The translations under genes and the position numbers were made by a program. Below, piece by piece: positions 12,819-46,900 of a DNA stretch of 64,000 nt (the first letter of the stretch is position 1; each line of letters opens with the position of its first letter). Below the pieces are notes generated by a model that saw only the letters and a program-made list of their open reading frames with translations, had not been told where the DNA came from and made no database searches. The stretch is taken from IMG/VR virus record IMGVR_UViG_3300042566_001780, positions 186,001 to 250,000 of that record; one strand, given 5' to 3'.

Positions 12819-12848
12819 GTTTGGAATCTCCAATAAATTAAACTCAAT

Positions 12849-23840: not shown

Positions 23841-25058
23841 TTAGATTCCATAACGCGAACGTGTTGCTTCGAAGTTTTGAGAGATTTCTTCATTGGATAA
23901 CTCTCGATTGTATATTTTGAAAAATCCTAAGTCCATTGACATTCGATATTGAGTACTATTCATCCAACCTGAAATTCTTCCTAAACCTGTAGTGAATGTT
24001 CTAGCTGATGGATGTTGAATGCCGGCAGTTTGTGTTAATGCTTGATTTACACCATTCACATATATCTTATTGTTTGTATACGGATTTGTGTTGATAGATG
24101 TGGTATTAACCATTTTAAAACATAAATGTTTCCAATTATTGAAAATACCTAGATTGGTAGTTTGCGTTGGAGTTAGCCCATATCTATCAGAATTACCTGT
24201 ATTGAATCCAAGCTCTCCATTCCCACCAAAAACATTATAGGAAGTGAACCCAAATGGCATCAAGGCATTAGTGCTTTTTAATTTTACAAACATTTCAACA
24301 GTGATTACACTTCCTAAAGTCCCAGCAAAAAAATCAGAATAATTATTGACTCCATCAAATGTTAAAAAGGTATTTCCAAATGTGGGATTAGCAAAAAGTG
24401 CAGTATTTGCTTGCGGATAAAGACTGGCCCAATTAACTCTATTTTGATTATATTTTGGGTTATAGATAGAAATATTGGATGCCAATTCTACTTGGAGTCC
24501 GTCCCACCAAATAGTTGTGCCTGCGCCATTAGCATTTGGACCATCTAATCTTATTTGTATGAATGCAACTTCAGCATTACTGAATGTGATGAAATGATCA
24601 AATCTCTGCCATTCAGGCGTCACTGTTATGGTTTTTGCAGAAATTCCATACCATCCACCTCCAGCTATTGCCGCATTTCCTAAACTATTTGCTCCAAATA
24701 GGTACAGTTCGCAATTGTTTAAAGTGACTGATGATTTAGCATAAACACTAACTCGCCATGTCTGACCATTAGCTGCAGTTGAGATATTCCATTTAGCTTC
24801 ATTGTAGGATCCGATATGCGCGTCATTTCCAGTAACACTCATTTTCAGCGGAATTCCATTAGCAGGAGATTTGGAAGTTAATAAATCTCGATCTACTGTA
24901 CAACTATTTCCACTATTGTTTCCCCTAGTAGAAACATACCAATCATAAATGTCATTTCCTTTTGGAAATGTGTTTGGGCTAAAACTTCTTGGATTTGCTG
25001 CATCTAAATGAAGCACTAATCCAGTATTAGGAATTTCTGGTCCAGAAAATACTGCCAT
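23841..25058 (-). CDS. LamG/ConA-like lectin protein 5, with an inserted CBM-like domain
   Basis: GLVLHLDAANPRS...IYNRELSNEEISQNFEATRSRYGI. Confidence 0.8.
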   Translation of the reverse strand: MAVFSGPEIPNTGLVLHLDAANPRSFSPNTFPKGNDIYDWYVSTRGNNSGNSCTVDRDLLTSKSPANGIPLKMSVTGNDAHIGSYNEAKWNISTAANGQTWRVSVYAKSSVTLNNCELYLFGANSLGNAAIAGGGWYGISAKTITVTPEWQRFDHFITFSNAEVAFIQIRLDGPNANGAGTTIWWDGLQVELASNISIYNPKYNQNRVNWASLYPQANTALFANPTFGNTFLTFDGVNNYSDFFAGTLGSVITVEMFVKLKSTNALMPFGFTSYNVFGGNGELGFNTGNSDRYGLTPTQTTNLGIFNNWKHLCFKMVNTTSINTNPYTNNKIYVNGVNQALTQTAGIQHPSARTFTTGLGRISGWMNSTQYRMSMDLGFFKIYNRELSNEEISQNFEATRSRYGI

Positions 25059-25060
25059 AA

Positions 25061-25738
25061 TTAGATTCCGTAACGACCACGAAGGGCCTCAAAGTTTTGC
25101 TTTATTTCTGAATCAGCAAGTGTTCTATTGTAAAGCAAAACAAATCCCATATTCACTACGTGGTTTCCAGATGGTGACAAATCTAACCTATTCAAATTAC
25201 CATATCCAGTAAGATCTTGAGTAATAGTGTCAGTATATAAAAGATCTCCATTTTTATAATTTTTTATTTGCGTGCCATTCAACGAACATGCATAAATTTT
25301 CCATGGAAAATTTGCATAATCTGTTAATGACAACATCTGCCTGGTCCACCATGAGTTTAAATTAAAATCTTTAATATAGTGTAAAACATTTGGAGTCGCA
25401 ATTTCACGAGTATCACTAAAGAAAAATGAATTTCCACTGACATCACGAATTCTTAAAATTCCTCGGTAATTAGAAATAGGGGTACCAGTTGGGCGGGCTG
25501 AATAAATAATAGTCCAATTATTCTTTGATATTTCTGGAAATGTTATTGTCGAAGCAGATGATGCATTGAAATCAATATAAGAATTGATGATAGACAATTG
25601 ACTAAATGAAGCTGTTGGCGACGTTTTACTTAAATCATTCATTATTAGCCCAGCACCAGGATATGACTTCACATTAGCTGCATCTAATTGAAGAATTAAT
25701 CCACTATCACTAATTGTTACACCATGCCCTAGACTCAT
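25061..25738 (-). CDS. LamG/ConA-like lectin protein 4
   Basis: GLILQLDAANVKSY...LYNRTLADSEIKQNFEALRGRYGI. Confidence 0.8.
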   Translation of the reverse strand: MSLGHGVTISDSGLILQLDAANVKSYPGAGLIMNDLSKTSPTASFSQLSIINSYIDFNASSASTITFPEISKNNWTIIYSARPTGTPISNYRGILRIRDVSGNSFFFSDTREIATPNVLHYIKDFNLNSWWTRQMLSLTDYANFPWKIYACSLNGTQIKNYKNGDLLYTDTITQDLTGYGNLNRLDLSPSGNHVVNMGFVLLYNRTLADSEIKQNFEALRGRYGI

Positions 25739-26955
25739 AAACCATATCTCCTACGGCATGCATTAAAATTTTCACGAATTTCTATTTCAGAAAGCTCTCT
25801 ATCATATATTGATAGTTGTCCTATCTTTCCCGAGAAATATTCTGATGAGGCATTATGAGCTCGTCTAGCAATAGTAAATTGCGGAGCTGTATTATTAGTT
25901 ATAGTTTGAGTAATACTTCCAGTATTTACACCATTAATGTATCCTTTAGAACCAGTTGGATTAGAAGTGATAACTAAGTGATACCAAATATTTGGCAAAA
26001 TAGAATTTGCCGGGGTAACTGCATAATCACTATTACTATTTCTAAACTGTAACTGATTATTTGTAATAACCATACCGTATGCAAAACTTAAACCAGATTG
26101 GCCTAATGTAAAAATAGTTCTTTTAGCAACTGGATCTGTTACATTTATCATTGCAATAATAGTAACCGCAGTCTGATTAACGTAACTCCCAAATGTTCCA
26201 TATAGATAGTCATTAGTTCCATCAAATGTTAAACACCTAGTTGGGTCATTAGTATGCGATGGCTGATTAATGTAATCAAAATTTATCGAAGAATTTATTA
26301 GATTTTTTGATTTTACAAAGGCATTTGGGTTTGGTTGAAATTCTGATGGCTGATTTCTAAATTCAAATTGTGGTGCAGAAATATAAAAATACTCTCCAGC
26401 ATTTGGATAATATGGAACAGTTCCGGCCCCAGCATCTGCATTACCAGTATAATTAGTCATATAAAGTGCAAAACACTTTAATGAATAAGTATCATTTACC
26501 CTAATTCTGGAAATTCTAATCCACCCGTCATCTAACATGTCAATTTTAAAATTTTCATATGTAGTTGAATAGGGTTTTCTAATGACAACTCCTGTTTCTA
26601 AATCTACTGTCACACCGTCAGCATTAGATGCAATAGATGGAGACAATCTGGCATACTTATAGGTACCGGCTTTGACATATATTGAAGAGCACCACGTCAA
26701 TTGAGCTTGGAATCTTTGATAACCCTGAACCAGGTATGAAGATCCAACACCGCTAGATGTTAACTTATATACTTTTTCGCGTGTAGGAGAAACTATAGAT
26801 ATATCTTCTTCTAGGGTTAATCCAGATTTAACCCATGTTGATTGTGCTAGATCATCAGTTCTGTATATTGCATTAACAAAAGATTTAGAATTTCCATCAT
26901 CTAAACATAATATCAACCCATTAGTAGCTATTTTTGCTCCATGCCCTAAACTCAT
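25735..26955 (-). CDS. LamG/ConA-like lectin protein 3, with an inserted domain
   Basis: GLILCLDDGNSKSF...IYDRELSEIEIRENFNACRRRYGL. Confidence 0.8.
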   Translation of the reverse strand: MSLGHGAKIATNGLILCLDDGNSKSFVNAIYRTDDLAQSTWVKSGLTLEEDISIVSPTREKVYKLTSSGVGSSYLVQGYQRFQAQLTWCSSIYVKAGTYKYARLSPSIASNADGVTVDLETGVVIRKPYSTTYENFKIDMLDDGWIRISRIRVNDTYSLKCFALYMTNYTGNADAGAGTVPYYPNAGEYFYISAPQFEFRNQPSEFQPNPNAFVKSKNLINSSINFDYINQPSHTNDPTRCLTFDGTNDYLYGTFGSYVNQTAVTIIAMINVTDPVAKRTIFTLGQSGLSFAYGMVITNNQLQFRNSNSDYAVTPANSILPNIWYHLVITSNPTGSKGYINGVNTGSITQTITNNTAPQFTIARRAHNASSEYFSGKIGQLSIYDRELSEIEIRENFNACRRRYGL

Positions 26956-27665
26956 AATCCATATCTCCTACGAGTAGCTTCGAAGTTTTGTTTGATTTCT
27001 TGTGAGGAGAGCGCGCGGCTATATTCTTTTACAGATGAAATTTGTCCTCCAAATATATCTGTAGCATTAGCATCTAATCTAATACCTATGTATCCTTGGT
27101 TAACAATAGTAGCTTTAGCCGCTTTACCTGTTTTTTCTATTGATAGATTGCCGTTAATATATATTTTTGATATGCTGTTATCTAATGTAGCGGATACGTT
27201 GAACCATTTGTTTGCGGATATTAAACCATTAGCTGTAGCTAAAGTTTCATTTCCATTGTCGGTAGTGAAATACTGAAAATGTATTAGATCTCCTGCTATG
27301 TGAATACCGTGTCTTTGCTGATAGGTGTAAACTGCTAAAGTCGGCGGATTTTGTTGTTGTGTATACAGATATTGTCTAATAGCAATATTAGTTGATACTG
27401 ATGTGGTGTTAAACCACACATCTAAGGTGGTAGATGTACCTCGATTTATTGGTACTACAGAACAGTAATCATTTACTTTATCAAATGTGAAACTACCTTT
27501 GTTATTTGTGTTATACACGGCACCGTTGATCAACGTTCCATCATTTCCACTTTCAGATAAATCTGTCCATAAAGTTCCGTTGCCTGGATAACTTCTTATA
27601 TTCCCTGCATCTAAACAAAGAACTAATCCATCTTCTACAATATTAGGTCCACAATGAGCGCTCAT
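26952..27665 (-). CDS. LamG/ConA-like lectin protein 2
   Basis: DGLVLCLDAGNIRSYPGNG...YSRALSSQEIKQNFEATRRRYGL. Confidence 0.85.
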   Translation of the reverse strand: MSAHCGPNIVEDGLVLCLDAGNIRSYPGNGTLWTDLSESGNDGTLINGAVYNTNNKGSFTFDKVNDYCSVVPINRGTSTTLDVWFNTTSVSTNIAIRQYLYTQQQNPPTLAVYTYQQRHGIHIAGDLIHFQYFTTDNGNETLATANGLISANKWFNVSATLDNSISKIYINGNLSIEKTGKAAKATIVNQGYIGIRLDANATDIFGGQISSVKEYSRALSSQEIKQNFEATRRRYGL

Positions 27666-28351
27666 ATGCCGTATCTTCCCTTAGTCGCTTCAAAGTTTTG
27701 GCGAATTTCTTGGGCAGAAAGCGCACGATTGTAAATTTGAGCTAAAGAAATTTTTCCCGAAAATGTACGATCAATAGCATTAGATCTATTGCCTAGCCGC
27801 AATTCATATAACGTCGTAATAGCACTTGGCAATCCAGTAGTCCCAGTGCTATTAACTACACCGTTTATGTAGATTATTGCACTGCCAGTACTAATAACCG
27901 ATACTGAAACATTAGTCCATTTTGTATATGGCACGGAATTAGCTGTTGAATTAACTGCTGCACCATTGTTTACAGTAATTGTCACATTTGGACTATTGGA
28001 GAAGTAAAAAGATATTCCACCCGCAGACCCAGTGTTATTATTAGTTTTATCAAAAATTCGACCATATCCACCCCCTCCAGCAGAAGCTGGATTAACCCAG
28101 GCAGATAACGTAAAACCATTTGACAAGTAAGAATTATCGGTAAATGTGTGGCAATAATCATCAACACCATCAAAAGTCAAACTACCTTTATTATCACTGC
28201 TATATCCAACACCATTCATTAATGTCCCATTATTTCCATTTCCACTCAAATCTGTCCATACTGTCCCAGATCCGGGGTATGACTTTACATTAGCTGCATC
28301 TAAATGCAGCACTAATCCATCTCTAACAATTGAAGGGTTATAAGCTATCAT
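27662..28351 (-). CDS. LamG/ConA-like lectin protein 1
   Basis: DGLVLHLDAANVKSYPGSG...IYNRALSAQEIRQNFEATKGRYGI. Confidence 0.85.
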   Translation of the reverse strand: MIAYNPSIVRDGLVLHLDAANVKSYPGSGTVWTDLSGNGNNGTLMNGVGYSSDNKGSLTFDGVDDYCHTFTDNSYLSNGFTLSAWVNPASAGGGGYGRIFDKTNNNTGSAGGISFYFSNSPNVTITVNNGAAVNSTANSVPYTKWTNVSVSVISTGSAIIYINGVVNSTGTTGLPSAITTLYELRLGNRSNAIDRTFSGKISLAQIYNRALSAQEIRQNFEATKGRYGI

Positions 28352-28532: not shown

Positions 28533-30602
28533 TTAAGCTGAAATAAGAGTTTCAGAAACTTTATATTGTGTAGAATTTGCAGTAGCTCGAGTAGCTAATA
28601 GTCTAACATTGCCAGTATTAATATCGACATCAAATGTGGCTAGTGCAGAGGCACCAGTAAAAACAACGCCATATTCTGTTACAAATGCAGCAGTTCCATT
28701 ATGCGCCACTAACAATTCCGAAATTTGAACTTCACTTGTTACTGAATCAAATGCTTGTACTATTAATTTAGCAGATCTAAATGATGCTGCGGTGAATGAT
28801 GCTACTTGAGTTTGAGTAGTGGAAGCTACGGTAGTAGCTTCAATTGATAAAGTCAGCGCATTTGAAAGACGAACTGCACCGGTGTATGACACATTAAAAA
28901 CATTAGTCTCATCAGACTGACGACATTGGAAAATATTTGTTGCAGTGGCTGGGGCCAAAATATCAACAATGCTACCACTAGAGCCCGAAGAAGTGCCCCC
29001 ATTGGAATCGGTGCTAAATCTATGAATACCCTGCCCGCTAACCCCAACACCAGCATGAGCATATCCGAGTGCTTTATTTGCTGTATAAAATGCAGTTATT
29101 CGAGTATTATCTTGCTGATTACCTATAGCAAGTGCACCTAATAAAATACCACCAGTTCCTGCGCCAACATTTACTATTTTTAAAGCAGGAATATTGGTTC
29201 TAGAGGCTCCATCAATTGTCGTTGTGTAATTTAATCGGAGTTCTCTGCGTGTTCCTGTTCCTGCCGACTCAGTCCCCAATGTTAATGTATTTGCATTAGA
29301 AACCCAGTCAAAAATACCACGTTCATAATTAGACGCATCGGTATAGGTGTTATATACTCTCAGTGTCTGTGGATTTACGCCATTTCTTTGAGCAAGAATA
29401 TTAGCTGCATCACGGTACAGATATAAATCTGGGCTATATAAGCTAGCCCCAAAAGCCATGTTTTGTAAAAACGTAGCTCCTGCACCTGTTGATATGTTTA
29501 ATTTTTCTTGACCGGCAGTTGCAAATAGTAAGTTATTTCCGTTTCTATAAAATCCGCTGTATGATGTGCTTAATCCAACTGCTATTCTTCCAGATTCAGT
29601 GTTAATGCTTCCAGTTTTCGTGATTTGCACTTTACTAACGCCGCCAACTTGCAAATCCATCAATAATGAAGAGGCGCTACTTGCAGTATCCGTTACATTC
29701 AACTTTATTGCTGTTGGAATTCCAGTAGTGTTCCAGGTCTGTGCTAAGTTGATTAGTGATCCAGCTAATGACCCAGAACCCGCTAATGCTGTATCAAGAA
29801 TGTCTAGTTTAGCTATCGGCGATGCTACGTTTATTCCCAATGACCCAATTACTGTTAGGAAATTATTCGTCTTATCCCAAGTAAGATCAGAATCACCAGC
29901 AGTTACACCAGAGTCGTTAAAAAGCACCTGGGTGTTTGCCCCGCCTATCGGGCCAACTGATCCTGTATAGCCTATATCACCCTTAGATCCGGTGTAACCG
30001 GTGACACCCTGGATGCCTTGGGAGCCTGTATACCCAGTTAATCCGATATCTCCTTTAGATCCGGTAAAACCTGCTGTGCCTTGTGAGCCAGTATATCCAC
30101 GAGAACCGGTAAAACCTATTGCACCTTGAGATCCAGTAAAACCGATTTCTCCTTGGCTACCAGTGTATCCAGTTAATCCTTGAAAACCTTGGGATCCTTG
30201 ACTACCAGTGTATCCAATTACACCCTGCGATCCAGTAAAACCAATATCACCTTTTGACCCCGTGAATCCTTGACTACCCGTAAAGCCGGCGGCTCCAGCA
30301 ACACCTTGGCTACCAGTGTATCCAATAACACCTTGCACGCCTTGAACACCTTGGCTACCAGTAAATCCTGTAGCTCCACGTGATCCAGTGTATCCTGCCG
30401 ATCCAGTATACCCCTGTGAACCAGTGTATCCAAACTTACCAATTGTTGTGATCGACTCGGTTCCACCAGTGCTCGTTGTATCTTGCTTAATATACAATAC
30501 GCCGTCGTAGGTGTTTATTGCTAATTCGCCTAATACTAGATCACTTGTTAGTGGAATCTTTCCAGGTACAGCACTTCTTTTAATACGAATAGTATTAGCC
30601 AT
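28533..30602 (-). CDS. Collagen-like fibre protein with an Mtd-N-like N-terminus
   Basis: MANTIRIKRS...LGELAINTYDG.LY; about 165 aa of uninterrupted Gly-X-Y; C-domain paralogous to 37998..38915. Confidence 0.8.
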   Translation of the reverse strand: MANTIRIKRSAVPGKIPLTSDLVLGELAINTYDGVLYIKQDTTSTGGTESITTIGKFGYTGSQGYTGSAGYTGSRGATGFTGSQGVQGVQGVIGYTGSQGVAGAAGFTGSQGFTGSKGDIGFTGSQGVIGYTGSQGSQGFQGLTGYTGSQGEIGFTGSQGAIGFTGSRGYTGSQGTAGFTGSKGDIGLTGYTGSQGIQGVTGYTGSKGDIGYTGSVGPIGGANTQVLFNDSGVTAGDSDLTWDKTNNFLTVIGSLGINVASPIAKLDILDTALAGSGSLAGSLINLAQTWNTTGIPTAIKLNVTDTASSASSLLMDLQVGGVSKVQITKTGSINTESGRIAVGLSTSYSGFYRNGNNLLFATAGQEKLNISTGAGATFLQNMAFGASLYSPDLYLYRDAANILAQRNGVNPQTLRVYNTYTDASNYERGIFDWVSNANTLTLGTESAGTGTRRELRLNYTTTIDGASRTNIPALKIVNVGAGTGGILLGALAIGNQQDNTRITAFYTANKALGYAHAGVGVSGQGIHRFSTDSNGGTSSGSSGSIVDILAPATATNIFQCRQSDETNVFNVSYTGAVRLSNALTLSIEATTVASTTQTQVASFTAASFRSAKLIVQAFDSVTSEVQISELLVAHNGTAAFVTEYGVVFTGASALATFDVDINTGNVRLLATRATANSTQYKVSETLISA
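29941..30440 (-). repeat. Uninterrupted Gly-X-Y tract dominated by G(F/Y)TGS(Q/K/R)
   Basis: Read from the translation; boundaries approximate. Confidence 0.85.
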
Positions 30603-30664
30603 GTGGCTTTATTTCCTATGAAATTGTCTAATGTTAGACTAGGTCGCTAAAAAGCATCAATATC

Positions 30665-30672
30665 CTATTTAG
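30665..30672 (-). promoter_or_regulatory. Late-promoter-like box CTAAATAG
   Basis: In the 78-bp divergent spacer, pointing to the collagen gene. Confidence 0.6.
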
Positions 30673-30680
30673 AAAAACCA

Positions 30681-33600
30681 ATGAAACCAACTATAGCAAT
30701 TATTGACATTATTGGGTTAACATATGATGGAAATACTCTTAACTTGCGAGGATTAGGTGGATCAGAATCTGCGGTGATTCTGCTTTCAAAAGAGCTATCT
30801 TTATGCGGGTTTGATGTTACAGTGTTCAATAATTGCATTGATAAACATGCGAGTCCTGGTGTTTATGCCGGTGTCAAATATGTTGATATATCCAAAATAG
30901 ATTCTGTTGAGAAAAATTTTGATATTGTCATCTCTTCGAGGACAGTAATACCTTTTATTACAGAAGATTTGCATCCATATTTCTTCCAGTTCGACCCAGC
31001 GAGATTCAAGCAATTAGCGCAAACAGCCAAATTTAAAGCTGTTTGGATGCATGACACTTTTTGTAAAGGTGATGAATTTCTAGAAAGGCTTCTACTTAAC
31101 GGGTCAATTGACGAGATTTTTACTCTGTCCGATTTCCACACTACATATGTCAGTACCGCAGACCATGGGCATCGCAGAATGCCCGAGGTTCTCAAAAACA
31201 AAATATTTATGACTCGAAATGGAGCCGTAAACTATTTTCCAGAAGTCAACATTTCTAAAAAAGACAGAAACTTATTTGTCTACAATGCATCAGTAACAAA
31301 AGGTATGCTGCCATTGGTCAAAAACATTTGGCCCCTCTTCAAATCGTTAAGACCAAATGCTCGATTAAAAGTGATCGGTGGATATTACCGATTTAGAGAA
31401 AACGCTGCACCTGATGAACAAGAAAAAACCTGGCGAGAACTTGTCAATGATCCGATCTACAAAACTTTGGATGTAGAGTTCACCGGAATTTTGAGGCAAC
31501 AAGAAATAGCAGAAATATTATCATCTGCTTCATTTATGGTTTATCCTGGCGCATTCCCAGAAACCTTTGGTATTTCTACTCTTGAATCTTTACTATACAA
31601 TACTCCACTGATTACGACCCGATTTGGTGCATTAGAAGAAACTGCAATTGATTCTGCATGCTATAAGATTGATTATTGTATTGAGCCTAATGGTTTATTT
31701 CCAAATATTTCTTTAGATGACCAATCTAAGAAGTTTGTTCAATTAATGTTGTCTGCGTATGATAATACATATTTGCACCAACAAAAAATGTATGCTTGCA
31801 ATGCAGTCAAAACTATAGCAGGCTGGGATAGTGTGGCATTGCAATGGAAGCAACATCTTTTTAAGAAGCTTGGTCTGTATTTGCCAGCATCAGATTACCA
31901 AAAAATAACTTCTATTAATGCTGAAGTTAAAGAAGTTTTTGGCAGAAGATTTAGCAATCCAGAAGAAAATTATCTTCCGCGAAATACCCAGCAGCATATA
32001 ACAGTCATTACCCCAGTATTCAACGCCGAGAAATACATAGAGCAATGTGTCCAATCTGTTATTACACAAGATTATGATAATTGGGACATGTACATTATTG
32101 ATGATTGCTCTACTGATTGTACTTCTAAAATTCTAGATGAATTGTCGGAATTAGATTCTCGCATCCATATCATTCATCAAACCTATAATGCCGGTGCGGT
32201 CAAAAATCAGGTAGTTACTATTAAAAAGATATGTTCGCCAGATGACATTATTCTGTTGTTAGATGGCGATGATGCACTTGTGAATGACAATCAAATTTTC
32301 CATTTTTACAACAATCTTTATACTAATGACCAAACTGAATTTACATATGGTTCGTGCTTCTCATTAGTTGATAAAATTCCATTAGTTGCTCAGCCATATC
32401 CAGAAGAAATTAAGAAATCTAAAAGATATCGAGATCATAAGTTCAACTGGAATATGCCATATACACATCTGAGAACCTTTAGAGCAAGATTAATGCTGAA
32501 TATCCCAGATGATAAATTTAAAGATGCGAATGGAAATTGGTATAAAGCTGGTGGTGACAATGCTACTTTTTATGAAGTAATTGAGCGCGCTGATCCAAAT
32601 AAAGTAAAAGCTATTTCTAGGATTAACTATCTCTACAATGACCTAAATCCAATCAATGATTGGAAAGTTAATGGACACGAACAAACAGCTAATGCAAAGT
32701 TTATCGGTAAATCAAATCTCAAATCTATGAAAACTATCTTAATCGCTATCCCAACTGCCAAGTACATTGAACCAGAAACCTTTAAGTCAATTTATGACTT
32801 AGAAGTTCCTGAAGGTTATAGGACTGAGTTTCAGTATTTTTTTGGGTACGCCCTGGAACAGGTACGCAATTTAATATCTGATTGGGCTCAGCGTTACGAT
32901 TATCTTTTTGCTGTAGACTCTGATATGAGCTTCAAACCGGATACATTGAAGCGATTATTGTCTCATGACAAAGATGTTGTCAGTGGGCTATACATCCAGC
33001 GGAAACCAGGTGAGCATATCTTGGAACTTTACCGCAATGGGCATAATATTCCATATGGTGATATTAAAAATCTGGGTCTAGTTGAAATTGATGCATGTGG
33101 ATTTGGTTGTGTATTAGTCAAGTCTAAAGTATTTTCTACCATTGGATATCCACAATTTGTATACAAATCAGCTTTAGATCATAAAGATACCGTATCAGAA
33201 GATGTGTACTTCTGCATGAAAGCAAAGCAATTTGGTTTCTCAATTTATGCAGATACGAATGTCATTTGCGATCATATTGGATCAACGAAATTTGTTGTAG
33301 ATCAAACTATTACTAAAAAGCAATCTGCATTTGATAGGCTTCTTGAATTGAGCAATACACGTTTGCTTCCAAGCAAACATGTTGAATATCTCTATGATAT
33401 GTCAAAGTCCCAGAATATCAAACCAAAAGTCATTTTTGATATAGGAGCATGTGTCCTGCACTGGACTCGAGAAGCGGTGAATGTTTGGCCGGATGCTAAG
33501 TTTTTTGCTTTTGAAGCTATGCAAGAATCAGAGCTTATTTTCAAACATTTTGGTGTCCCGCACTTTATTGGTGTATTAAGCGATCAAGACAATAAGGAAG

Positions 33601-33998
33601 TGAGCTTCTACAAAAATGTCACACACCCAGGCGGAAATTCATATTACCGAGAGAATGACGAGATAGTAAAAAATGCGTCCGCTTATTTCAATGAAGGAAA
33701 CAAAGAAATTCGCAAAACAGTCACTCTTGATACGCTAATGAAATCTGCTAATTTGCCACAACCAGATTTAATCAAGATGGATGTTCAAGGTGCAGAGCTA
33801 GATATTTTGAAAGGCGGTTTGTCTACTTTAACTAAATGTCAAGATGTTATTCTTGAATTGCAAAAAATTGAGTATAACAAAGGAGCTCCATTGAAAGACG
33901 AAGTCATCCAATTTATGCTTGAGCGGGGATTTAAATTAATATCTGGTCCATTCTGTGATAACGGACCAGACGGTGATTATCATTTTTCTAGAATTTAG
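30681..33998 (+). CDS. Four-domain enzyme: GT4 (GT-B) + GT2 + GT2-like + FkbM methyltransferase
   Basis: GLGGSESA and YPGAFPETFGISTLES (GT4); VITPVFNAEKYIEQC and LLDGDD (GT2); YLFAVDSD, GFGCVLVK, SEDVYFC (GT-A); IFDIGA and IKMDVQGAELDILKG (FkbM). Confidence 0.9.
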   Translation: MKPTIAIIDIIGLTYDGNTLNLRGLGGSESAVILLSKELSLCGFDVTVFNNCIDKHASPGVYAGVKYVDISKIDSVEKNFDIVISSRTVIPFITEDLHPYFFQFDPARFKQLAQTAKFKAVWMHDTFCKGDEFLERLLLNGSIDEIFTLSDFHTTYVSTADHGHRRMPEVLKNKIFMTRNGAVNYFPEVNISKKDRNLFVYNASVTKGMLPLVKNIWPLFKSLRPNARLKVIGGYYRFRENAAPDEQEKTWRELVNDPIYKTLDVEFTGILRQQEIAEILSSASFMVYPGAFPETFGISTLESLLYNTPLITTRFGALEETAIDSACYKIDYCIEPNGLFPNISLDDQSKKFVQLMLSAYDNTYLHQQKMYACNAVKTIAGWDSVALQWKQHLFKKLGLYLPASDYQKITSINAEVKEVFGRRFSNPEENYLPRNTQQHITVITPVFNAEKYIEQCVQSVITQDYDNWDMYIIDDCSTDCTSKILDELSELDSRIHIIHQTYNAGAVKNQVVTIKKICSPDDIILLLDGDDALVNDNQIFHFYNNLYTNDQTEFTYGSCFSLVDKIPLVAQPYPEEIKKSKRYRDHKFNWNMPYTHLRTFRARLMLNIPDDKFKDANGNWYKAGGDNATFYEVIERADPNKVKAISRINYLYNDLNPINDWKVNGHEQTANAKFIGKSNLKSMKTILIAIPTAKYIEPETFKSIYDLEVPEGYRTEFQYFFGYALEQVRNLISDWAQRYDYLFAVDSDMSFKPDTLKRLLSHDKDVVSGLYIQRKPGEHILELYRNGHNIPYGDIKNLGLVEIDACGFGCVLVKSKVFSTIGYPQFVYKSALDHKDTVSEDVYFCMKAKQFGFSIYADTNVICDHIGSTKFVVDQTITKKQSAFDRLLELSNTRLLPSKHVEYLYDMSKSQNIKPKVIFDIGACVLHWTREAVNVWPDAKFFAFEAMQESELIFKHFGVPHFIGVLSDQDNKEVSFYKNVTHPGGNSYYRENDEIVKNASAYFNEGNKEIRKTVTLDTLMKSANLPQPDLIKMDVQGAELDILKGGLSTLTKCQDVILELQKIEYNKGAPLKDEVIQFMLERGFKLISGPFCDNGPDGDYHFSRI

Positions 33999-36900
33999 AA
34001 AGTGCCGCCATCAATTTCGCCCCAAACCGGAAGACCTTGATCATTTGCTTGCAGAATTTGCCCATTCGTTCCAATTGGCAATTTTGCAACTGTATTGGTG
34101 GCGCTAGCATACAACATATCCCCTTTAGTATATGAAGATACGCCAGTGCCACCATGATCAAATGAAAGTATTCCAGTTATATTGGCATGACCAACGTCAA
34201 CTGCAGTTACTGGGATAGTAATATTTGCAGATCCATTAAAGCTCGTAGCAGTGCCTGTCACTGGCCCGCTAATAGCAATAGTTCTGGAAGTCTGCAGGGT
34301 GCTAGCAGTTGTTGCATTTCCGGAGAATGATGTAGCAGTTATTGTGCCAGGTACAGTCAGATTTGCTACACCCTGGGAAATAACATCTAATTCCATTGCG
34401 CTGAATACTGTACCACCGGATGGCGTAAATCTCCATCTCCAAGTATCAGTCTGCGATGAATCGTCTGCTAAATTGAAGTCAAAAAATGTATTAGATCCAG
34501 AAACTGAAGTAGAGATAGATGCATTATCTGTTGCCTCTGCAGCAAATGCAATTGACGTTACTCCAGTCAACGTTGTATGATTGTGACTATTGTCGACGAC
34601 TTGCGCAGTTAATGTGCCTGACGTCAATCCGGTTAAGGTAACAGAACCAGTCAAATCTCCAGCTAGTGTAATAACTGGGCTAGGCTTATTTTGTATTTCA
34701 GACCAGTCTATACTAGTGTCATTTGCGCTAATAGTGATTGTAGCAGAATCATTCCTGGTAATAGATACGTTTGTACCTGCAACCAGTGTAACTGTATCAG
34801 ATAGCGCATTTGACCCTGTCAGTTTTATACCTGCACCAGAAGCCGATGTTTCAGCAGATAACACATATGTCGTATTGGTATCAACAACAGTTTCAGTTGC
34901 AGTAGAAACTGCAGTGACGTGTCCGAATGTGTCAAATGTTAATCCAGTGACGTAGGTTCTGGCAGTTGCTGATAGATTTGCTACGCTTGATGTATCGGCA
35001 TGGCTAAACTGCGTGCCTACTAAAGTTAATCCAGAACCAGCAGTATAGGTGGTATTGACTGAACTAATGCTAATAGTATTAGCGTCAACATAAGCTACTG
35101 TTACGTTACTGCCTGATGAGAGCTTAATTGTGTCAGTACCTGATCCAGATCCACCGGCATTTAGGTTAAAGTTTGCTCCGCCTGTAGTTGCCTCTGCACT
35201 AATATTGTAGGTTGTATTTGTGTCTACAATATTGACAGTTGGCAATGTTAAAGTAACTGAACCTTTTGCCGTGACGTGGCCCTGAGCATCATATGTGACA
35301 CTCGGCACTGAGAATGAATCACCAAAAGCAAGATTTCTAGTAACTCCGCCTTCTGAAGCAGTTCCAGCAACCACCACATTTGAGTGATTAAATGTAGTCC
35401 CAGAAAGCGATAATCCAGTACCTGCAGAGTATGTAGTATTAGTGTCAACTACAGTTTCGGTGCCTGTTGAATATCCAGTCACATGGCCAAAAGTGTCAAA
35501 GGTTAATCCTGTGACATAGGTTCTACCATTAGCAGCCAAATTACTTACACTTGATGTATCAGTATGACTAAATTGAGTGCCAGTTAAGGTTAATCCACCT
35601 CCCGCTGTATATGTGCCAACACCTGAAAATTGTGTCCAATTTATAGCGGTAGTGCCTACAGTCATTGGTAATGTTGGAACTACTGCTACCCATCCTGTAT
35701 TTGCCTGTGTTGTCCCTTCCTGCACAAACACATAACCAGAAGGTATTTCAGATGCTTCATCGCAATACCCACAACGGGTTAATACCCATGGCGTAGAAGC
35801 AGAGCCTAAGTCTGATATGTAATAACGACCGTTATGCGCAGCATTTGTTTGGTTCTTAACTAAAATACCAGTTAATGTAGTTGTAAAAGTAACACCATCA
35901 ATATCTGGAATAACACCATTTACTGTAGCTGTAAGGGTTGCACCTACTCCTAAAGTCCCATTATTGTATGTTGCTGATAAGTTTCCTGTGGTAGCAGCTT
36001 TTACTGCAGGCTTTGCAGCAATGCCTTGAGCTACCTCGTCGACATACTGCTTAGTGGCAGCATGCAGAGCTTGAGATGGGCCACTGTGTAATGTTAAGAA
36101 ACCTGTTAACGTATCACCGCTAACATTAACAAATAAATTATCGACTTCTGATTTCTGATAATAGCGTGTGTCCAGATCTATTGAGCCTGTAGTAATAGCA
36201 GTGACGTGCCCAAAAGTATCAAATGTAACTGAGATGTCCTGGAGCACATTAGCGCCAGAATTATCTATTGCCAGATTAGTGACAGATGAAGTATCTGTGT
36301 GGGAAATAGTTGGGGTCCAACCTTCACCAGCAGTTCCTGTAATTGTTATTCCTGATCCAGCTGTGATACCTGCTACGTAATTTCCAGTAGTGTCAGTTCC
36401 AAGTGCAACAGAATTTGCAGCAATAGTCGTGGTAATAGACACATTACCTAAGTTAGTCATTGTAGCAGAACCGGTGACATCACCAGTCAAGGTAATAGTT
36501 GGATCAGCTACATCAAAATTAAGTTTACCGGTTGCATCATCATACGTGACTGAAATTCCAGATTCAGTATTTGAAGATACCATATTTCCGACAGTATCCT
36601 GAATTGATTCCACATTTATAGAAACTGCTCCAGCCGTTACTGTAAAATCTGTTGCACTAAATGAAGCAATACCTTTTGTAGAAGCGGATGCATCTGCAAT
36701 AGAAATTGATACGGTATTGTTAGTGATTGCTGTATTGACAGGGTCGGTACCAACAAATGAAAGGGTATCAGTTAGTAATGATACGCTATCTGTACCTGAA
36801 TCTCCAGAAATGTTCAGGGAAGATGATACAGGTGAATTTTGCCATCTTGAGTTTGCAGCACTCCAAGATAATACCTGGCCGTCTGTTACCCCATTTATTC

Positions 36901-37930
36901 TAACATCATGAAGATCATATAGATGATACCCGAAGTCAGGTCTAACAAGCAAAATACCGTTTTGCGCAGAAGGCGATGTAGATTGGCGTAGAACCGCAGC
37001 TACTACTATTTTTGGATTGGGTGATGTAGGCTCAACTGAAGTAAAACCACCAGGAACAGTGGGATTTAGATAGAGTATCGTACCAGCCGGATAATCATAT
37101 AAAAGCAGATCCCGAACTTTACCTAATGTTGTTACATATCCCCATTCATTATTCAGAATGTTTTGGGTGGCAATACCTATAACCCAACGTGGTTGGAATC
37201 CAATGGCAGTAACATCAGCTTTCGTGAATAATGCTTGGTCACCTTGCGCACCAGCAAACATCACTACTTCACCGTTTAGAATGTCACCAACTGCTCTTCC
37301 ATAAAAATGCTGTTCTTGAAAAATTTGACCGGTGACCCCATTCATTAATGAAAAGTCGTAGGTCTTATCGGTTTCATTCCATTTAAGAACATCTAGCGGA
37401 GTATATCCAACTTCATTGGTTGTTATTCTTAACCCGGATACAGATACTAAATTATTACTATCTCGTACTGGTACAGTTGACGGCGCATTTGAAGTAGATG
37501 ATTGATAACCGTCAAGTAAATCTGCATTGAGGTTAGTGACAACGGTGGCAGATGCTACTTGAAGTGGTGCAGTGCCTACAGGAATAGTTGATTTAAGTAC
37601 TGTTGCACTCAAACTTCCGCTGATTTGCAATTTGTCAACACCGTTGTCTATACTCGTGCCAATAAGCACGTTACCAAACAACTCGGCTAACTGGATTTTA
37701 CCAGTATCATAAATCTCTATGCTTGGGACACCAGAAATGTCATTGACGGCAAAAATGAGGCCAGTTAGACTATCAGTGATTGAAAATAATTGACCACTAT
37801 TTCCTGTGACAGAAAGCGTATCAGAATCGAGCATACTAATTTGAATAGTATGCGTAGTCGAATCAGAAACAAAACTAATATTCTGTGTTTCTAATCCATT
37901 TTCAACTACAAATCTTTTGTTATTTGCCAT
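33995..37930 (-). CDS. Large modular fibre protein
   Basis: Thr/Ser/Gly-rich; repeated HTDTSSV...FDTFGHVT modules; N-domain shared with 21364..23544. Confidence 0.8.
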   Translation of the reverse strand: MANNKRFVVENGLETQNISFVSDSTTHTIQISMLDSDTLSVTGNSGQLFSITDSLTGLIFAVNDISGVPSIEIYDTGKIQLAELFGNVLIGTSIDNGVDKLQISGSLSATVLKSTIPVGTAPLQVASATVVTNLNADLLDGYQSSTSNAPSTVPVRDSNNLVSVSGLRITTNEVGYTPLDVLKWNETDKTYDFSLMNGVTGQIFQEQHFYGRAVGDILNGEVVMFAGAQGDQALFTKADVTAIGFQPRWVIGIATQNILNNEWGYVTTLGKVRDLLLYDYPAGTILYLNPTVPGGFTSVEPTSPNPKIVVAAVLRQSTSPSAQNGILLVRPDFGYHLYDLHDVRINGVTDGQVLSWSAANSRWQNSPVSSSLNISGDSGTDSVSLLTDTLSFVGTDPVNTAITNNTVSISIADASASTKGIASFSATDFTVTAGAVSINVESIQDTVGNMVSSNTESGISVTYDDATGKLNFDVADPTITLTGDVTGSATMTNLGNVSITTTIAANSVALGTDTTGNYVAGITAGSGITITGTAGEGWTPTISHTDTSSVTNLAIDNSGANVLQDISVTFDTFGHVTAITTGSIDLDTRYYQKSEVDNLFVNVSGDTLTGFLTLHSGPSQALHAATKQYVDEVAQGIAAKPAVKAATTGNLSATYNNGTLGVGATLTATVNGVIPDIDGVTFTTTLTGILVKNQTNAAHNGRYYISDLGSASTPWVLTRCGYCDEASEIPSGYVFVQEGTTQANTGWVAVVPTLPMTVGTTAINWTQFSGVGTYTAGGGLTLTGTQFSHTDTSSVSNLAANGRTYVTGLTFDTFGHVTGYSTGTETVVDTNTTYSAGTGLSLSGTTFNHSNVVVAGTASEGGVTRNLAFGDSFSVPSVTYDAQGHVTAKGSVTLTLPTVNIVDTNTTYNISAEATTGGANFNLNAGGSGSGTDTIKLSSGSNVTVAYVDANTISISSVNTTYTAGSGLTLVGTQFSHADTSSVANLSATARTYVTGLTFDTFGHVTAVSTATETVVDTNTTYVLSAETSASGAGIKLTGSNALSDTVTLVAGTNVSITRNDSATITISANDTSIDWSEIQNKPSPVITLAGDLTGSVTLTGLTSGTLTAQVVDNSHNHTTLTGVTSIAFAAEATDNASISTSVSGSNTFFDFNLADDSSQTDTWRWRFTPSGGTVFSAMELDVISQGVANLTVPGTITATSFSGNATTASTLQTSRTIAISGPVTGTATSFNGSANITIPVTAVDVGHANITGILSFDHGGTGVSSYTKGDMLYASATNTVAKLPIGTNGQILQANDQGLPVWGEIDGGTF

Positions 37931-37956
37931 AATTCAGGTTCCATCGCACGTATAAC

Positions 37957-37964
37957 CTATTTAT
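37957..37964 (-). promoter_or_regulatory. Late-promoter-like box ATAAATAG
   Basis: About 27 bp upstream of 37930. Confidence 0.6.
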
Positions 37965-37997
37965 GGACGATGTCTAGAACGGAGAATAATTGCCAAA

Positions 37998-38915: not shown

Positions 38916-38921
38916 TTTGAA

Positions 38922-46873: not shown

Positions 46874-46900
46874 TGCTTTTTGCACTTACAAGGAGAACCT

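What the first reader, a model, noticed from the sequence alone, without database searches (positions are those of the whole stretch)
28533..33998. Candidate phage fibre-glycosylation system: a GT4-GT2-GT2-FkbM enzyme set head-to-head with a Thr-rich collagen fibre gene
Seen: a 1105-aa protein with a GT-B (GT4) domain, two GT-A (GT2-type) domains and an FkbM methyltransferase. It lies on the opposite strand inside the ~30-kb fibre locus, 78 bp from the gene with the longest G(F/Y)TGS collagen tract. Established: chains of GTs plus a methyltransferase build and cap oligosaccharides. O-glycosylated Thr in the Yaa position stabilises hydroxyproline-free collagen (vent-worm cuticle collagen), and Bacillus BclA collagen carries methylated glycans on Thr. 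Inference: this one polypeptide builds a methyl-capped glycan on the phage's own fibres, giving a glycan coat that stabilises or shields them.
Basis: partly seen in the sequence, partly recalled or inferred. Interest (0 to 1): 0.82.

Follow-up and report, generated by a model that had tools for sequence, protein, structure and literature searches.

The report
Phage fibre-locus four-domain glycan-building enzyme
A giant phage encodes one 1105-residue protein with three sugar-adding domains and a methyl-adding domain, placed back-to-back with a threonine-rich collagen tail-fibre gene; it most likely sugar-coats the phage's own fibres, but the same phage also seems to make modified cytosine DNA, so a DNA target is not excluded.

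Summary
ORF 30681-33998(+) is an intact 1105-aa GT-B/GT4 + GT2 + second GT-A + FkbM protein. All catalytic motifs are invariant across relatives, and there is no membrane segment. It lies 78 bp head-to-head with a 689-aa G(F/Y)TGS collagen fibre gene, inside a minus-strand fibre module.

The family is large, modular and essentially phage-only: 376 clusters at 50% identity and at least 581 IMG/VR contigs.

In 117 non-redundant loci:
- A Thr-rich collagen gene is the immediate upstream neighbour in 30 of 104 (10 expected), 29 of them divergent.
- This state looks ancestral on the enzyme tree.
- Another 13 loci sit just downstream of giant lectin/glycine-rich fibre-like proteins.

Fibre glycosylation is therefore the best reading (about 0.5), with collagen Thr the favoured acceptor.
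1. The window also encodes a predicted dCMP hydroxymethylase 13 kb away, so 5hmC-DNA glycosylation is a live rival. That gene is never within 10 kb of the enzyme in 193 loci.
2. The FkbM domain is missing in many collagen-adjacent relatives.
3. The window's late-promoter motif faces every fibre gene but not this gene.

No acceptor is shown. I rate it a new variant of known virion-glycosylation systems.

The parts
30681..33998 (+). Four-domain enzyme, 1105 aa. Approximate domains: GT-B/GT4 (residues 1-420), GT2 GT-A (440-680), second GT-A (684-880), FkbM methyltransferase (917-1105).
   Evidence: Pfam, PHROG and NCBIfam hits. AF2 model with pLDDT 89.5. Foldseek matches: MshA/BshA for the GT-B part; PmHS2/K4CP tandem GT-A polymerases; Moumouvirus FkbM at TM 0.94. 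Invariant E294/E302, D528-D531, D746/D748 and E840-D841, and near-invariant D920/G922. No TM segment.
30603..30680 (.). 78-bp divergent intergenic gap. CTAAATAGG at 30664-30672 on the minus strand faces the collagen gene. No copy faces the enzyme gene.
   Evidence: In relatives the motif faces the collagen gene in 25 of 30 gaps and the enzyme gene in 14 of 30.
28533..30602 (-). 689-aa tail-fibre protein. It has a 168-aa Pro-poor G(F/Y)TGSx collagen tract (Thr in every second Yaa position) and a C-terminal domain shared with cyanophage tail fibres. It is the proposed acceptor.
21364..23544 (-). Second collagen fibre protein, 726 aa, with four G(F/Y)TGS tracts (237 aa, 25 motifs). It is a further candidate acceptor.
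19758..20066 (-). Small 102-aa protein with two short GYTGS tracts.
23841..28351 (-). Run of five small genes downstream of the collagen fibre gene. The first three (229, 237 and 406 aa) have concanavalin-A-like Laminin_G_3 lectin domains. The 225-aa ORF has no Pfam hit. The 405-aa ORF has only a sub-threshold Sialidase N-terminal hit.
33995..43553 (-). Large fibre-like genes (1311, 305 and 1543 aa) convergent with the enzyme gene. The 1311-aa gene overlaps its stop codon by 4 bp.
46880..47881 (+). Predicted dCMP 5-hydroxymethylase, a ThyA-fold protein. It is the basis of the DNA-glycosylation rival and is not shown to be part of the system.
   Evidence: Best PDB matches are MilA (8e-32) and T4 dCMP hydroxymethylase (5e-19), both ahead of any thymidylate synthase. 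It falls below all NCBIfam ThyA cutoffs. Invariant Cys172, Asp195 and Asp203, read with the residue rules in PMC13326640.

Best explanation
The protein is a soluble, cytoplasmic, one-polypeptide glycan assembly line made by the phage. The GT4-type domain and the two GT-A domains add sugars in turn from nucleotide sugars. The FkbM domain then O-methylates a sugar with SAM, probably the terminal one.

The product is most likely an O-linked glycan on the phage's own fibre proteins, added as they are made. The favoured acceptor is Thr in the Yaa position of the Pro-poor G(F/Y)TGSx collagen tracts of the neighbouring fibre genes.

Shown here:
- the domain architecture;
- conservation of every catalytic motif;
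- restriction of the family to phages;
- its conserved placement in fibre loci.

Inferred:
- the acceptor;
- the order of the steps, the sugars, and whether the product is an oligosaccharide or a polymer;
- any stabilising or shielding effect.
For: 1. Four intact catalytic domains with invariant motifs across 50 relatives of 45-68% identity.
2. No TM segment or signal peptide, so the enzyme acts in the cytoplasm, where phage proteins fold.
3. The family is essentially viral:
   - 376 clusters at 50% identity with E<=1e-30;
   - at least 581 IMG/VR contigs;
   - only 2 hits in 185,579 species genomes, both MAG contigs with the same phage-like collagen-fibre gene neighbourhood;
   - Atlas clusters labelled Uroviricota.
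4. Gene context in 117 non-redundant loci:
   - a Thr-rich collagen gene is the immediate upstream neighbour in 30 of 104, against 10.1 expected;
   - 29 of those 30 are divergent;
   - 13 more loci lie directly downstream of giant Laminin_G_3/Gly_rich_2 fibre-like proteins.
5. 26 of 37 loci with at least 8 kb on both sides hold a Thr-rich collagen gene. The figure is 0 of 31 for hydroxymethylase loci, which also include fibre genes.
6. On the enzyme tree the collagen-adjacent state is a deep paraphyletic grade. It is kept while the adjacent fibre gene varies from about 270 to 2621 aa.
7. T4-late-like promoter motifs face the collagen gene in 25 of 30 gaps (shuffles: mean 4.3). They face the enzyme gene in 14 of 30 (shuffles: mean 3.1, maximum 8).
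8. P4H-like 2OG-Fe(II) oxygenase genes (PF13640) abut the enzyme gene in 6 of 117 lineages.
9. Precedents:
   - SgtA, encoded next to bclA3, puts O-GlcNAc on Thr of GPT collagen repeats (PMC7157674);
   - PBCV-1 A064R is a GT-GT-methyltransferase that builds the methylated end of the capsid glycan (PMC9614988);
   - mycobacteriophage capsid and tail-tube subunits are glycosylated (cited in PMC12619734).
Against: - No result identifies the acceptor.
- The adjacency may be inherited synteny. The tree fits one ancestral arrangement followed by losses, so the 30 loci are not independent events.
- Three derived clades are not next to collagen. The about-1580-aa clade with two GT4 domains sits after an SNase gene and near DNA ligase, RNR and NT5C genes.
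- In this window, the YTAAATAGR motif that precedes the fibre genes does not face the enzyme gene. The gene is on the same strand as the nucleotide-metabolism genes.
- Tail-fibre regions are known hot spots for unrelated cargo genes (my own knowledge).
- Collagen-like tracts occur in 883 phage records in the collection searched. Only 130 records there show any match to the enzyme, none covering 80% of it. The enzyme is therefore not required for phage collagen in general.
- The window encodes a predicted 5hmC pathway enzyme.
Confidence: 0.5

Rival explanations
1. DNA hypermodification. The phage replaces cytosine with 5-hydroxymethylcytosine, and this enzyme builds a (methylated) oligosaccharide on 5hmC in phage DNA to block host nucleases.
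For: - A predicted dCMP hydroxymethylase lies 12.9 kb downstream. MilA and T4 gp42 are its best matches, and it has Asp at the cytosine-specifying position (residue rule from PMC13326640).
- A guanylate-kinase-like protein (possibly a dNMP kinase) and a Nuc_deoxyri_tr2 protein lie nearby. A NUDIX protein is also encoded somewhere in the window but was not mapped.
- No other glycosyltransferase was found in the 64-kb window.
- Known phage DNA glycosyltransferases are GT4-like GT-B or GT-A enzymes related to LPS and teichoic-acid enzymes. They can sit beside structural genes (bioRxiv 10.1101/2023.12.21.572611; PMC13326640).
- The enzyme gene is on the same strand as the DNA-metabolism genes and lacks the late motif.
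- The clade with two GT4 domains sits next to SNase, ligase and RNR genes.
Against: - The hydroxymethylase is within 10 kb of the enzyme in 0 of 193 loci. No domain of the enzyme is within 10 kb of the hydroxymethylase in 0 of 31 loci. The only contig on both lists is the window's own.
- A 190-kb relative carrying the hydroxymethylase has no such enzyme within 20 kb on the fibre side.
- The relative on the 63-kb contig (L002, enzyme 64% identical) has a terminase, not a hydroxymethylase, beyond the fibre module.
- The papers read here contain no mention of a methyltransferase-fused or multi-domain DNA glycosyltransferase.
Confidence: 0.15
2. Virion glycosylation, but of proteins other than the collagen tracts. 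Candidates are the giant lectin/glycine-rich fibre proteins, other fibre domains, or capsid and decoration proteins. On this reading the collagen adjacency is incidental.
For: - Thirteen lineages have the enzyme directly downstream of, and co-directional with, giant Laminin_G_3/Gly_rich_2 proteins. Most of these have no collagen gene within 10 kb.
- A 42-kb podovirus has a GT/methyltransferase cluster right after its capsid gene, with a GT-B domain 25% identical to this one.
- Mycobacteriophages glycosylate capsid and tail-tube subunits (via PMC12619734).
Against: - The collagen neighbour is the commonest arrangement and apparently the ancestral one.
- Thr in regular G-X-T repeats is a proven O-glycosylation substrate elsewhere.
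Confidence: 0.15
3. Host-directed or free glycan synthesis. The enzyme remodels a host envelope glycan (an LPS or EPS precursor), for example to block superinfection, or it makes a free methylated polysaccharide. It sits in the fibre region only because that region tolerates cargo genes.
For: - The tandem GT-A part matches bifunctional polysaccharide polymerases most closely: PmHS2 at 2e-16, and K4CP.
- The closest NCBIfam and PDB names are teichuronic-acid, colanic-acid, PNAG and teichoic-acid enzymes.
- GT chains combined with a terminating methyltransferase resemble ABC-transporter-type O-antigen synthesis (my own knowledge).
- The gene lacks the late promoter motif in this window.
Against: - No membrane segment.
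- No flippase, ABC transporter, lipid-carrier or sugar-nucleotide gene was found in the window ORFs scanned.
- Virtually no cellular homologues share the conserved motifs.
- The head-to-head pairing with collagen genes is conserved, and half of those gaps carry a late-type motif facing the enzyme gene.
Confidence: 0.12

Closest known systems
Clostridioides difficile SgtA / BclA3, and Bacillus BclA glycosylation
   Same: - The glycosyltransferase gene lies immediately next to the gene for a Pro-poor collagen-like surface fibre with Thr in G-X-T repeats.
- The Thr residues are O-glycosylated in the cytoplasm.
- The BclA glycan ends in a 2-O-methylated sugar, anthrose (PMC7157674; PMC6222408).
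   Different: - SgtA is a 358-aa GT-A plus TPR protein that adds only the first GlcNAc. Here there is no TPR, and three GT domains plus a methyltransferase are fused.
- The repeat is G(F/Y)TGSx, not GPT.
- This system is encoded by a phage.
- Homology to SgtA was not tested, because no SgtA sequence was available from the tools.
Chlorovirus PBCV-1 A064R
   Same: A virus-encoded, soluble, single polypeptide with two glycosyltransferase domains and a C-terminal methyltransferase. It builds and methyl-caps the end of the glycan on the virus's own structural protein (PMC9614988).
   Different: - A064R is 638 aa, extends N-linked capsid glycans and belongs to a eukaryotic virus.
- Its domains are of other families, and it was not among the top 50 viral fold matches.
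- The resemblance is therefore of design, not of descent.
Mimivirus L230 and giant-virus fibril glycosylation clusters
   Same: - The virus encodes both collagen-like proteins and the enzyme that glycosylates them.
- Giant viruses carry many multi-domain GT2/GT4/FkbM proteins. The FkbM domain here superposes on a Moumouvirus FkbM protein at TM 0.94 with 38% identity (PMC9614988).
   Different: - L230 is a lysyl hydroxylase plus a GLT25D1-like GT that acts on hydroxylysine. The tract here has only 3 Lys, and the enzyme has no hydroxylase domain.
- P4H-like oxygenases occur as separate neighbours in only 6 of 117 lineages and not in this window.
Mycobacteriophage virion glycosylation (Freeman et al. 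2023)
   Same: Phage-encoded glycosyltransferases placed among structural genes decorate virion proteins with O-glycans (as summarised in PMC12619734).
   Different: - There the acceptors are the C-termini of the capsid and tail-tube subunits, and the enzymes are separate small proteins.
- No collagen link is described.
- The paper itself was not available to read.
Phage DNA glycosyltransferases (T4 alpha/beta-GT; 5hmC and 5hoC glycan writers)
   Same: GT-B/GT4-like and GT-A enzymes in phages that also encode a ThyA-like hydroxymethylase. The same PDB neighbours recur (7fg9/8x3q, 7qsg, BGluT, MshA, BshA).
   Different: - Those are single-domain enzymes, usually clustered with the base-modifying gene.
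- Here four domains are fused, none is clustered with the hydroxymethylase, and a sugar methyltransferase is attached.

Membership tests
GT4-type GT-B glycosyltransferase (Pfam Glycos_transf_1 / Glyco_trans_1_4) | Profile match above the curated cutoff | tested here: met
   35.7 and 36.2 bits against cutoffs of 26.4 and 27, residues 193-326.
GT4-type GT-B glycosyltransferase (Pfam Glycos_transf_1 / Glyco_trans_1_4) | Two-Rossmann GT-B fold and the E-x7-E motif | tested here: met
   AF2 model. Foldseek matches MshA, BshA, PimA and tll1591 at target TM 0.63-0.70. E294 and E302 are invariant in 50 sequences.
GT2 GT-A glycosyltransferase (Pfam Glycos_transf_2), first GT-A domain | Profile match above cutoff, and a DXD motif | tested here: met
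   86.1 bits against 23.3. D528-G-D530-D531 and D475 are invariant. Best PDB match is 5hea at 9.5e-16.
GT-A glycosyltransferase, second GT-A domain (residues about 684-880) | Match to a curated GT family above cutoff | tested here: not met
   Only Anp1, at 18.4 bits against a cutoff of 28.8. STIV A197 at E 0.098.
GT-A glycosyltransferase, second GT-A domain (residues about 684-880) | GT-A-like fold with DXD and acidic catalytic motifs | tested here: met
   phrog_1574 at 3e-21 and phrog_34859 'glycosyltransferase'. Alternating strand/helix secondary structure with high confidence in the model. The tandem GT-A region matches PmHS2/K4CP. D746, D748, E840 and D841 are invariant.
FkbM-family SAM-dependent methyltransferase | Profile match above cutoff, Rossmann methyltransferase fold, SAM motif | tested here: met
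   Pfam 68 bits against 22.7. TIGR01444 54.2 bits against 37.7. Moumouvirus FkbM at TM 0.94, rmsd 1.2. The D920-I-G922 motif is near-invariant.
Collagen triple-helix repeat protein (the 689-aa fibre) | Long uninterrupted G-X-Y repeat and a Pfam Collagen match | tested here: met
   88.7 bits against 27.2. 168-aa uninterrupted tract. Triple-helix formation itself cannot be tested with these tools.
Virus-encoded virion glycosylation system | Glycan covalently attached to a virion protein by the viral enzyme | not testable with these tools
   Needs glycoproteomics or an in vitro assay.
Virus-encoded virion glycosylation system | Enzyme gene embedded among structural genes and conserved there | tested here: met
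   Collagen or giant fibre protein is the immediate neighbour in 43 of 104 non-redundant loci. A collagen gene lies within 10 kb in 26 of 37.
BclA/SgtA-type collagen Thr O-glycosylation | G-X-T collagen acceptor with the GT gene adjacent | tested here: met
   78-bp gap. 17 G[FY]TGS motifs.
BclA/SgtA-type collagen Thr O-glycosylation | SgtA architecture (GT-A plus TPR) | tested here: not met
   No TPR hit in the Pfam scan. The architecture is different.
Phage DNA (5hmC) glycosyltransferase system | The phage encodes a 5hmC-forming enzyme | tested here: met
   Predicted dCMP hydroxymethylase at 46880..47881. This is a prediction only.
Phage DNA (5hmC) glycosyltransferase system | GT clustered or co-distributed with the base-modifying gene | tested here: not met
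   0 of 193 enzyme loci and 0 of 31 hydroxymethylase loci within 10 kb. The two genes are 12.9 kb apart in the window. One shared contig only.
Phage DNA (5hmC) glycosylation system | Glycosylated base in virion DNA | not testable with these tools
   Needs nucleoside LC-MS.
ABC-transporter-type polysaccharide synthase with methyl terminator (WbdA/WbdD-like) | Associated transporter, lipid-carrier and membrane-anchoring components | tested here: not met
   None found among the window ORFs scanned, and no TM segment.

The most novel reading that the evidence does not exclude
Aquatic jumbo phages have evolved their own version of 'sweet is stable'. A single fused enzyme, GT4-GT2-GT-A with or without FkbM, O-glycosylates Thr at the Yaa position of proline-poor G(F/Y)TGSx collagen fibres and substitutes for hydroxyproline in stabilising the triple helix. 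The lectin-domain proteins encoded just downstream may dock on, or work with, that glycan coat. This would be the first collagen-glycosylation system in bacteriophages. It would be widespread, given the hundreds of viral contigs that carry the enzyme.
Probability: 0.35. Interest if true: 0.8.

Novelty: new variant of a known kind. Interest (0 to 1): 0.62.

Why it matters
If the enzyme does glycosylate the fibres, three things follow:
- Phage receptor-binding organelles would carry phage-made glycans. That bears on host recognition, resistance to proteases and grazers, particle stickiness in water, and antibody recognition of therapeutic phages.
- It would give a compact, soluble, self-contained enzyme for putting defined methylated glycans on simple G-X-T peptide repeats.
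- It would show that hydroxyproline-free collagen stabilisation by Thr glycosylation arose in viruses of bacteria.

If the target is instead 5hmC DNA, this would be the first fused, methyl-capping DNA glycan writer. Either way, a family of several hundred clusters in uncultivated large phages has no assigned function at present.

Tried and rejected
- **Near-identical DNA in cultured phages:** none found. Protein matches in cultured phages are only to single domains.
- **Sigma-70 promoter and terminator scans of 27.5-38.5 kb:** no more hits than in shuffled sequence.
- **Sequence search of PDB with the FkbM domain and the second GT-A domain:** nothing useful.
- **Names for NCBI-sourced family members:** none given.
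- **Cellular homologues:** only two MAG contigs, and both look like phage. No cellular context could be used.
- **Walking along contigs:** covered only about 10 kb per look-up. The remaining 227 kb of the window's own 291.7-kb contig was not seen, so other glycosyltransferases may exist there.
- **COLGALT1 (collagen galactosyltransferase):** it appears among the fold matches, but only at rank 47 and with low TM. I treat that as generic tandem GT-A similarity, not as evidence.
- **P4H-like oxygenase neighbours:** considered as a collagen-modification signature, but they occur in only 6 of 117 lineages and not in this window.
- **Freeman et al. 2023 and the published Cell Reports version of Pyle et al.:** neither was available.
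- **Host-serotype conversion (Gtr-type):** rejected, because there are no membrane proteins.

Full report
**What is there**

The window is part of a 291,687-bp viral contig, IMGVR_UViG_3300042566_001780, so this is a jumbo phage. ORF 30681..33998 on the plus strand is intact and encodes 1105 residues.

Pfam places three domains above the curated cutoffs:
- a GT4-type GT-B domain, Glycos_transf_1, at residues 193-326;
- a GT2 domain at 441-549;
- an FkbM methyltransferase at 920-1086.

A fourth region, about 684-880, reaches only a sub-threshold Anp1 hit. It does match two PHROG families, one annotated as glycosyltransferase, at 3e-21.

An AlphaFold2 model built on 50 relatives is confident (mean pLDDT 89.5). 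It shows four separate alpha/beta domains with a disordered linker only at residues 678-681. The fold matches are as follows:
- The first domain matches retaining GT4 enzymes (MshA, BshA, PimA).
- The two central domains together match bifunctional tandem GT-A polymerases (heparosan synthase PmHS2, chondroitin polymerase K4CP).
- The last domain matches a Moumouvirus FkbM protein at TM 0.94.

The catalytic signatures are invariant or nearly so in relatives down to 45% identity. They are E294-x7-E302, D528-G-D-D531, D746-S-D748, E840-D841 and the D920-I-G922 SAM motif. There is no hydrophobic segment long enough to span a membrane.

Seventy-eight base pairs upstream, on the other strand, starts a 689-residue fibre protein. 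Its features are:
- a phage-fibre N-terminus;
- one uninterrupted 168-residue G-X-Y tract with 17 G[FY]TGS motifs and a single proline;
- a C-terminal domain shared with a cyanophage tail fibre.

One qualification applies: the 726-residue fibre at 21364..23544 holds more collagen in total.

**The surroundings**

From about 14.8 to 46.7 kb almost every gene is on the minus strand and fibre-like. The set includes:
- two collagen fibres and a small collagen protein;
- three concanavalin-A-like (Laminin_G_3) small proteins, in a run of five small genes just downstream of the collagen fibre;
- fibre-like proteins of 1311 and 1543 residues.

Two tail-fibre assembly chaperones are also encoded in the window but were not mapped.

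A motif YTAAATAGR, which resembles the T4 late promoter, occurs 9 times against 3.4 expected. Every copy is intergenic and faces a gene start, and five fibre genes carry it or a close variant. No copy faces the enzyme gene.

From 46.9 kb onward the genes are on the plus strand and deal with nucleotides and DNA. They include a ThyA-fold protein, a helicase, a guanylate-kinase-like protein and a deoxyribosyltransferase-like protein. DHFR and NUDIX proteins are also encoded in the window, but their positions were not mapped.

**An unexpected rival**

The ThyA-fold protein at 46880..47881 is not an ordinary thymidylate synthase.
- Its best solved relatives are CMP hydroxymethylase MilA (8e-32) and T4 dCMP hydroxymethylase (5e-19).
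- It falls far below every NCBIfam thymidylate-synthase cutoff.
- It keeps the catalytic Cys. It has Asp at the position that specifies cytosine (E. coli N177). It keeps Asp at E. coli position 169, which argues against the 5-hydroxycytosine class (using the rules in PMC13326640).

The phage therefore probably makes 5-hydroxymethylcytosine DNA. Phages that do so usually glycosylate it (my own knowledge). Known DNA glycosyltransferases are GT4-like or GT-A enzymes, and they can sit near structural genes. No other glycosyltransferase was found in the 64 kb examined.

**Comparative test: family size and make-up**

The enzyme belongs to a large family:
- more than 1,900 hits in the 90%-clustered collection;
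- 376 clusters at 50% identity with E<=1e-30;
- at least 581 IMG/VR contigs and at least 471 metagenome contigs.

Among 185,579 species genomes only two hits appeared. Both are MAG contigs whose flanks look like phage, with the same collagen-fibre gene context.

The family is modular. Forms seen include:
- a core GT4-GT2-GT-A protein of about 870-950 aa without FkbM;
- the about-1100-aa form found here;
- about-1340-aa forms;
- about-1580-aa forms with a second GT4 domain;
- about-1800-aa forms with a second FkbM domain;
- split versions, GT4-GT2 plus GT-A-FkbM.

**Comparative test: gene context**

I collected 193 loci with up to 10 kb on each side. They reduce to 117 after merging enzyme genes that are about 90% identical or more at the DNA level.
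- Of 104 with an upstream gene, 30 have a Thr-rich collagen gene as the immediate neighbour, and 29 of those are head-to-head as here. Drawing the neighbour at random from the genes of the same locus would give 10.1.
- In those loci the fibre gene ranges from about 270 to 2621 residues, with up to about 1,500 residues of G(F/Y)TGSx repeat.
- Thirteen further lineages have the enzyme directly downstream of giant proteins built of Laminin_G_3 and glycine-rich domains.
- Of 37 loci with at least 8 kb on both sides, 26 contain a Thr-rich collagen gene.

The 31 loci centred on homologues of the hydroxymethylase also include fibre genes on one side. None of them contains a Thr-rich collagen gene or any domain of the enzyme. 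None of the 193 enzyme loci contains the hydroxymethylase. The only contig on both lists is the window's own.

Two walks outward along contigs gave further data:
- A 190-kb relative carrying the hydroxymethylase has neither the enzyme nor collagen within 20 kb on the fibre side.
- The relative on the 63-kb contig (L002, enzyme 64% identical) has a terminase rather than a hydroxymethylase beyond its fibre module.

**How much the association proves**

A maximum-likelihood tree of 74 enzymes shows that the collagen-adjacent state is not scattered at random. It forms a deep paraphyletic grade, with at least six changes. It is lost in three derived clades: the clade with two GT4 domains that follows an SNase gene, the 'giant protein' clade, and a small third one.

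The simplest reading is one ancient head-to-head pairing, kept over enzyme divergence to about 52% identity and over large changes in the fibre gene. That fits functional coupling, but it is not a set of independent events. Fibre regions are also known to collect cargo genes (my own knowledge).

The divergent gaps add something. The late-type motif faces the collagen gene in 25 of 30 distinct gaps (shuffles: mean 4.3). It faces the enzyme gene in 14 of 30 (shuffles: mean 3.1, maximum 8). It faces the hydroxymethylase in 0 of 26. In about half of the lineages, then, the enzyme seems to be a late gene transcribed back-to-back with the fibre. In this window and its two closest relatives the copy facing the enzyme is missing, so its timing here is open.

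**Most likely mechanism**

The protein is a cytoplasmic, soluble enzyme with three glycosyltransferase sites and one methyltransferase site.
- The GT4 domain (predicted to be retaining) and the two GT-A domains add sugars from nucleotide donors.
- The resemblance of the GT-A pair to alternating co-polymerases leaves open a repeating polymer rather than a short chain.
- The FkbM domain methylates a sugar hydroxyl. In other systems that step caps or terminates a chain (A064R; O-antigen terminators, my own knowledge).

The acceptor I consider most likely is Thr in the Yaa position of the G(F/Y)TGSx tracts of the adjacent fibre and of the 726-residue fibre. These tracts have almost no proline, so hydroxyproline cannot stabilise them.

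The direct precedent is SgtA. It is encoded next to bclA3 and O-GlcNAcylates Thr in GPT collagen repeats.

The architecture, conservation, viral restriction and gene context are shown. The acceptor, the sugars, the order of steps and any effect on stability or shielding are inferred. I put fibre glycosylation at about 0.5, and within that the collagen Thr acceptor at about 0.35.

**Rivals**

1. DNA 5hmC glycosylation, about 0.15. It is supported by the hydroxymethylase, by the lack of another GT in the window, by the strand and by the missing late motif. It is weakened by the complete lack of co-localisation or shared contigs elsewhere, and by the unprecedented fused methyltransferase.
2. Glycosylation of other virion proteins, about 0.15. 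It is supported by the giant-protein clade and by a podovirus whose GT/methyltransferase cluster follows the capsid gene.
3. Host envelope or free polysaccharide synthesis, about 0.12. It is supported by the polymerase-like fold and by the names of the nearest bacterial families. It is weakened by the absence of membrane or export parts and of cellular homologues.

**Comparison with what is known**

- In design, the protein works like PBCV-1 A064R (GT-GT-methyltransferase on the virus's own structural protein).
- In gene context, it resembles SgtA/BclA3.
- In theme, it resembles Mimivirus L230, a viral enzyme for viral collagen.
- It is a member of none of these. Its domains belong to GT4, GT2, an unclassified GT-A group and FkbM. 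It has neither TPR nor hydroxylase domains.
- Virion glycosylation by phage enzymes is established in mycobacteriophages. Neither paper search returned a collagen-linked case or this four-domain enzyme family.

I therefore rate it a new variant of a known kind. Interest is 0.62. The family is large and unassigned, and the hypothesis is testable by simple co-expression. The acceptor remains unproven, and a credible DNA alternative sits in the same window.

Noticed in passing
window 46880-47881 (+), with 52126-52764 and 52757-53269: A predicted dCMP 5-hydroxymethylase. It is MilA/T4 gp42-like, with Asp at the cytosine-specifying position and Asp kept at the position that marks 5-hydroxycytosine synthases. 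A guanylate-kinase-like protein and a deoxyribosyltransferase-like protein lie nearby. The phage probably has 5hmC DNA. The order 'fibre module, then hydroxymethylase, then helicase' is conserved in about 30 jumbo-phage contigs.
   Followed up: partly
window, 9 sites: 1570, 5865, 7083, 7094, 12848, 23582, 30664, 43580, 46779: The motif YTAAATAGR (like the T4 late promoter TATAAATA) occurs 9 times against 3.4 expected. Every copy is intergenic and faces a gene start. It is probably this phage's late promoter. Related motifs lie in the enzyme/collagen gaps of relatives.
   Followed up: partly
window 7102-8325 (+): A TnpB/IS605 OrfB-type protein (OrfB_IS605, Cas12f1-like TNB and HTH domains) inside a jumbo phage genome. 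Two copies of the late-like motif lie just upstream on the other strand.
   Followed up: no
window 53749-54582 (+): A strong match to the CBASS inhibitor Acb3 (Pfam PF25187, 5.9e-56). It is an anti-defence gene in the nucleotide-metabolism block.
   Followed up: no
window 23841-28351 (-): A run of five small genes right after the collagen fibre gene. The first three (229, 237 and 406 aa) are concanavalin-A-like lectin-domain (Laminin_G_3) proteins; the other two gave no hit above cutoff. They could be fibre-tip or glycan-binding parts. Giant proteins with the same domain precede the enzyme in another clade.
   Followed up: partly
L045 13341-13673 (-) and 25 other loci: A conserved ORF of 105-114 aa lies just downstream of the enzyme gene on the opposite strand in 26 loci. 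It has a weak LtfC-like beta-sandwich hit. It is absent from this window, where a 1311-aa fibre gene takes its place.
   Followed up: partly
L045 13685-14275, L085 9429-9986, L103 9423-9992 and others: Prolyl-4-hydroxylase-like 2OG-Fe(II) oxygenase genes (PF13640) abut the enzyme gene in 6 of 117 lineages. They may be a second protein-modifying activity. None is present in the window.
   Followed up: partly
L047, L049, L107, L131 and others (about-1580-aa enzyme clade): In the clade with two GT4 domains, the enzyme gene always follows a staphylococcal-nuclease-like (SNase) gene and lies near DNA ligase, RNR or NT5C genes. This is a different and unexplained context.
   Followed up: no
L055 (MW202524.1, 3147-11978): A 42-kb podovirus from Manatee Spring carries a 761-aa GT, two further GTs, a hyaluronan-synthase-like GT2 and two methyltransferases, all directly after its major capsid gene. 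This looks like a separate candidate virion-glycosylation cluster.
   Followed up: no
window 10995-12833 (-), and unmapped ORFs among those of alignment A3: A PcfJ-like protein lies at 10995-12833. DHFR, NUDIX, HD, a TnsA-like endonuclease N-terminal domain, GNAT, HNH and two tail-fibre assembly chaperone domains were detected among the window's smaller ORFs. They were not mapped to individual ORFs.
   Followed up: no
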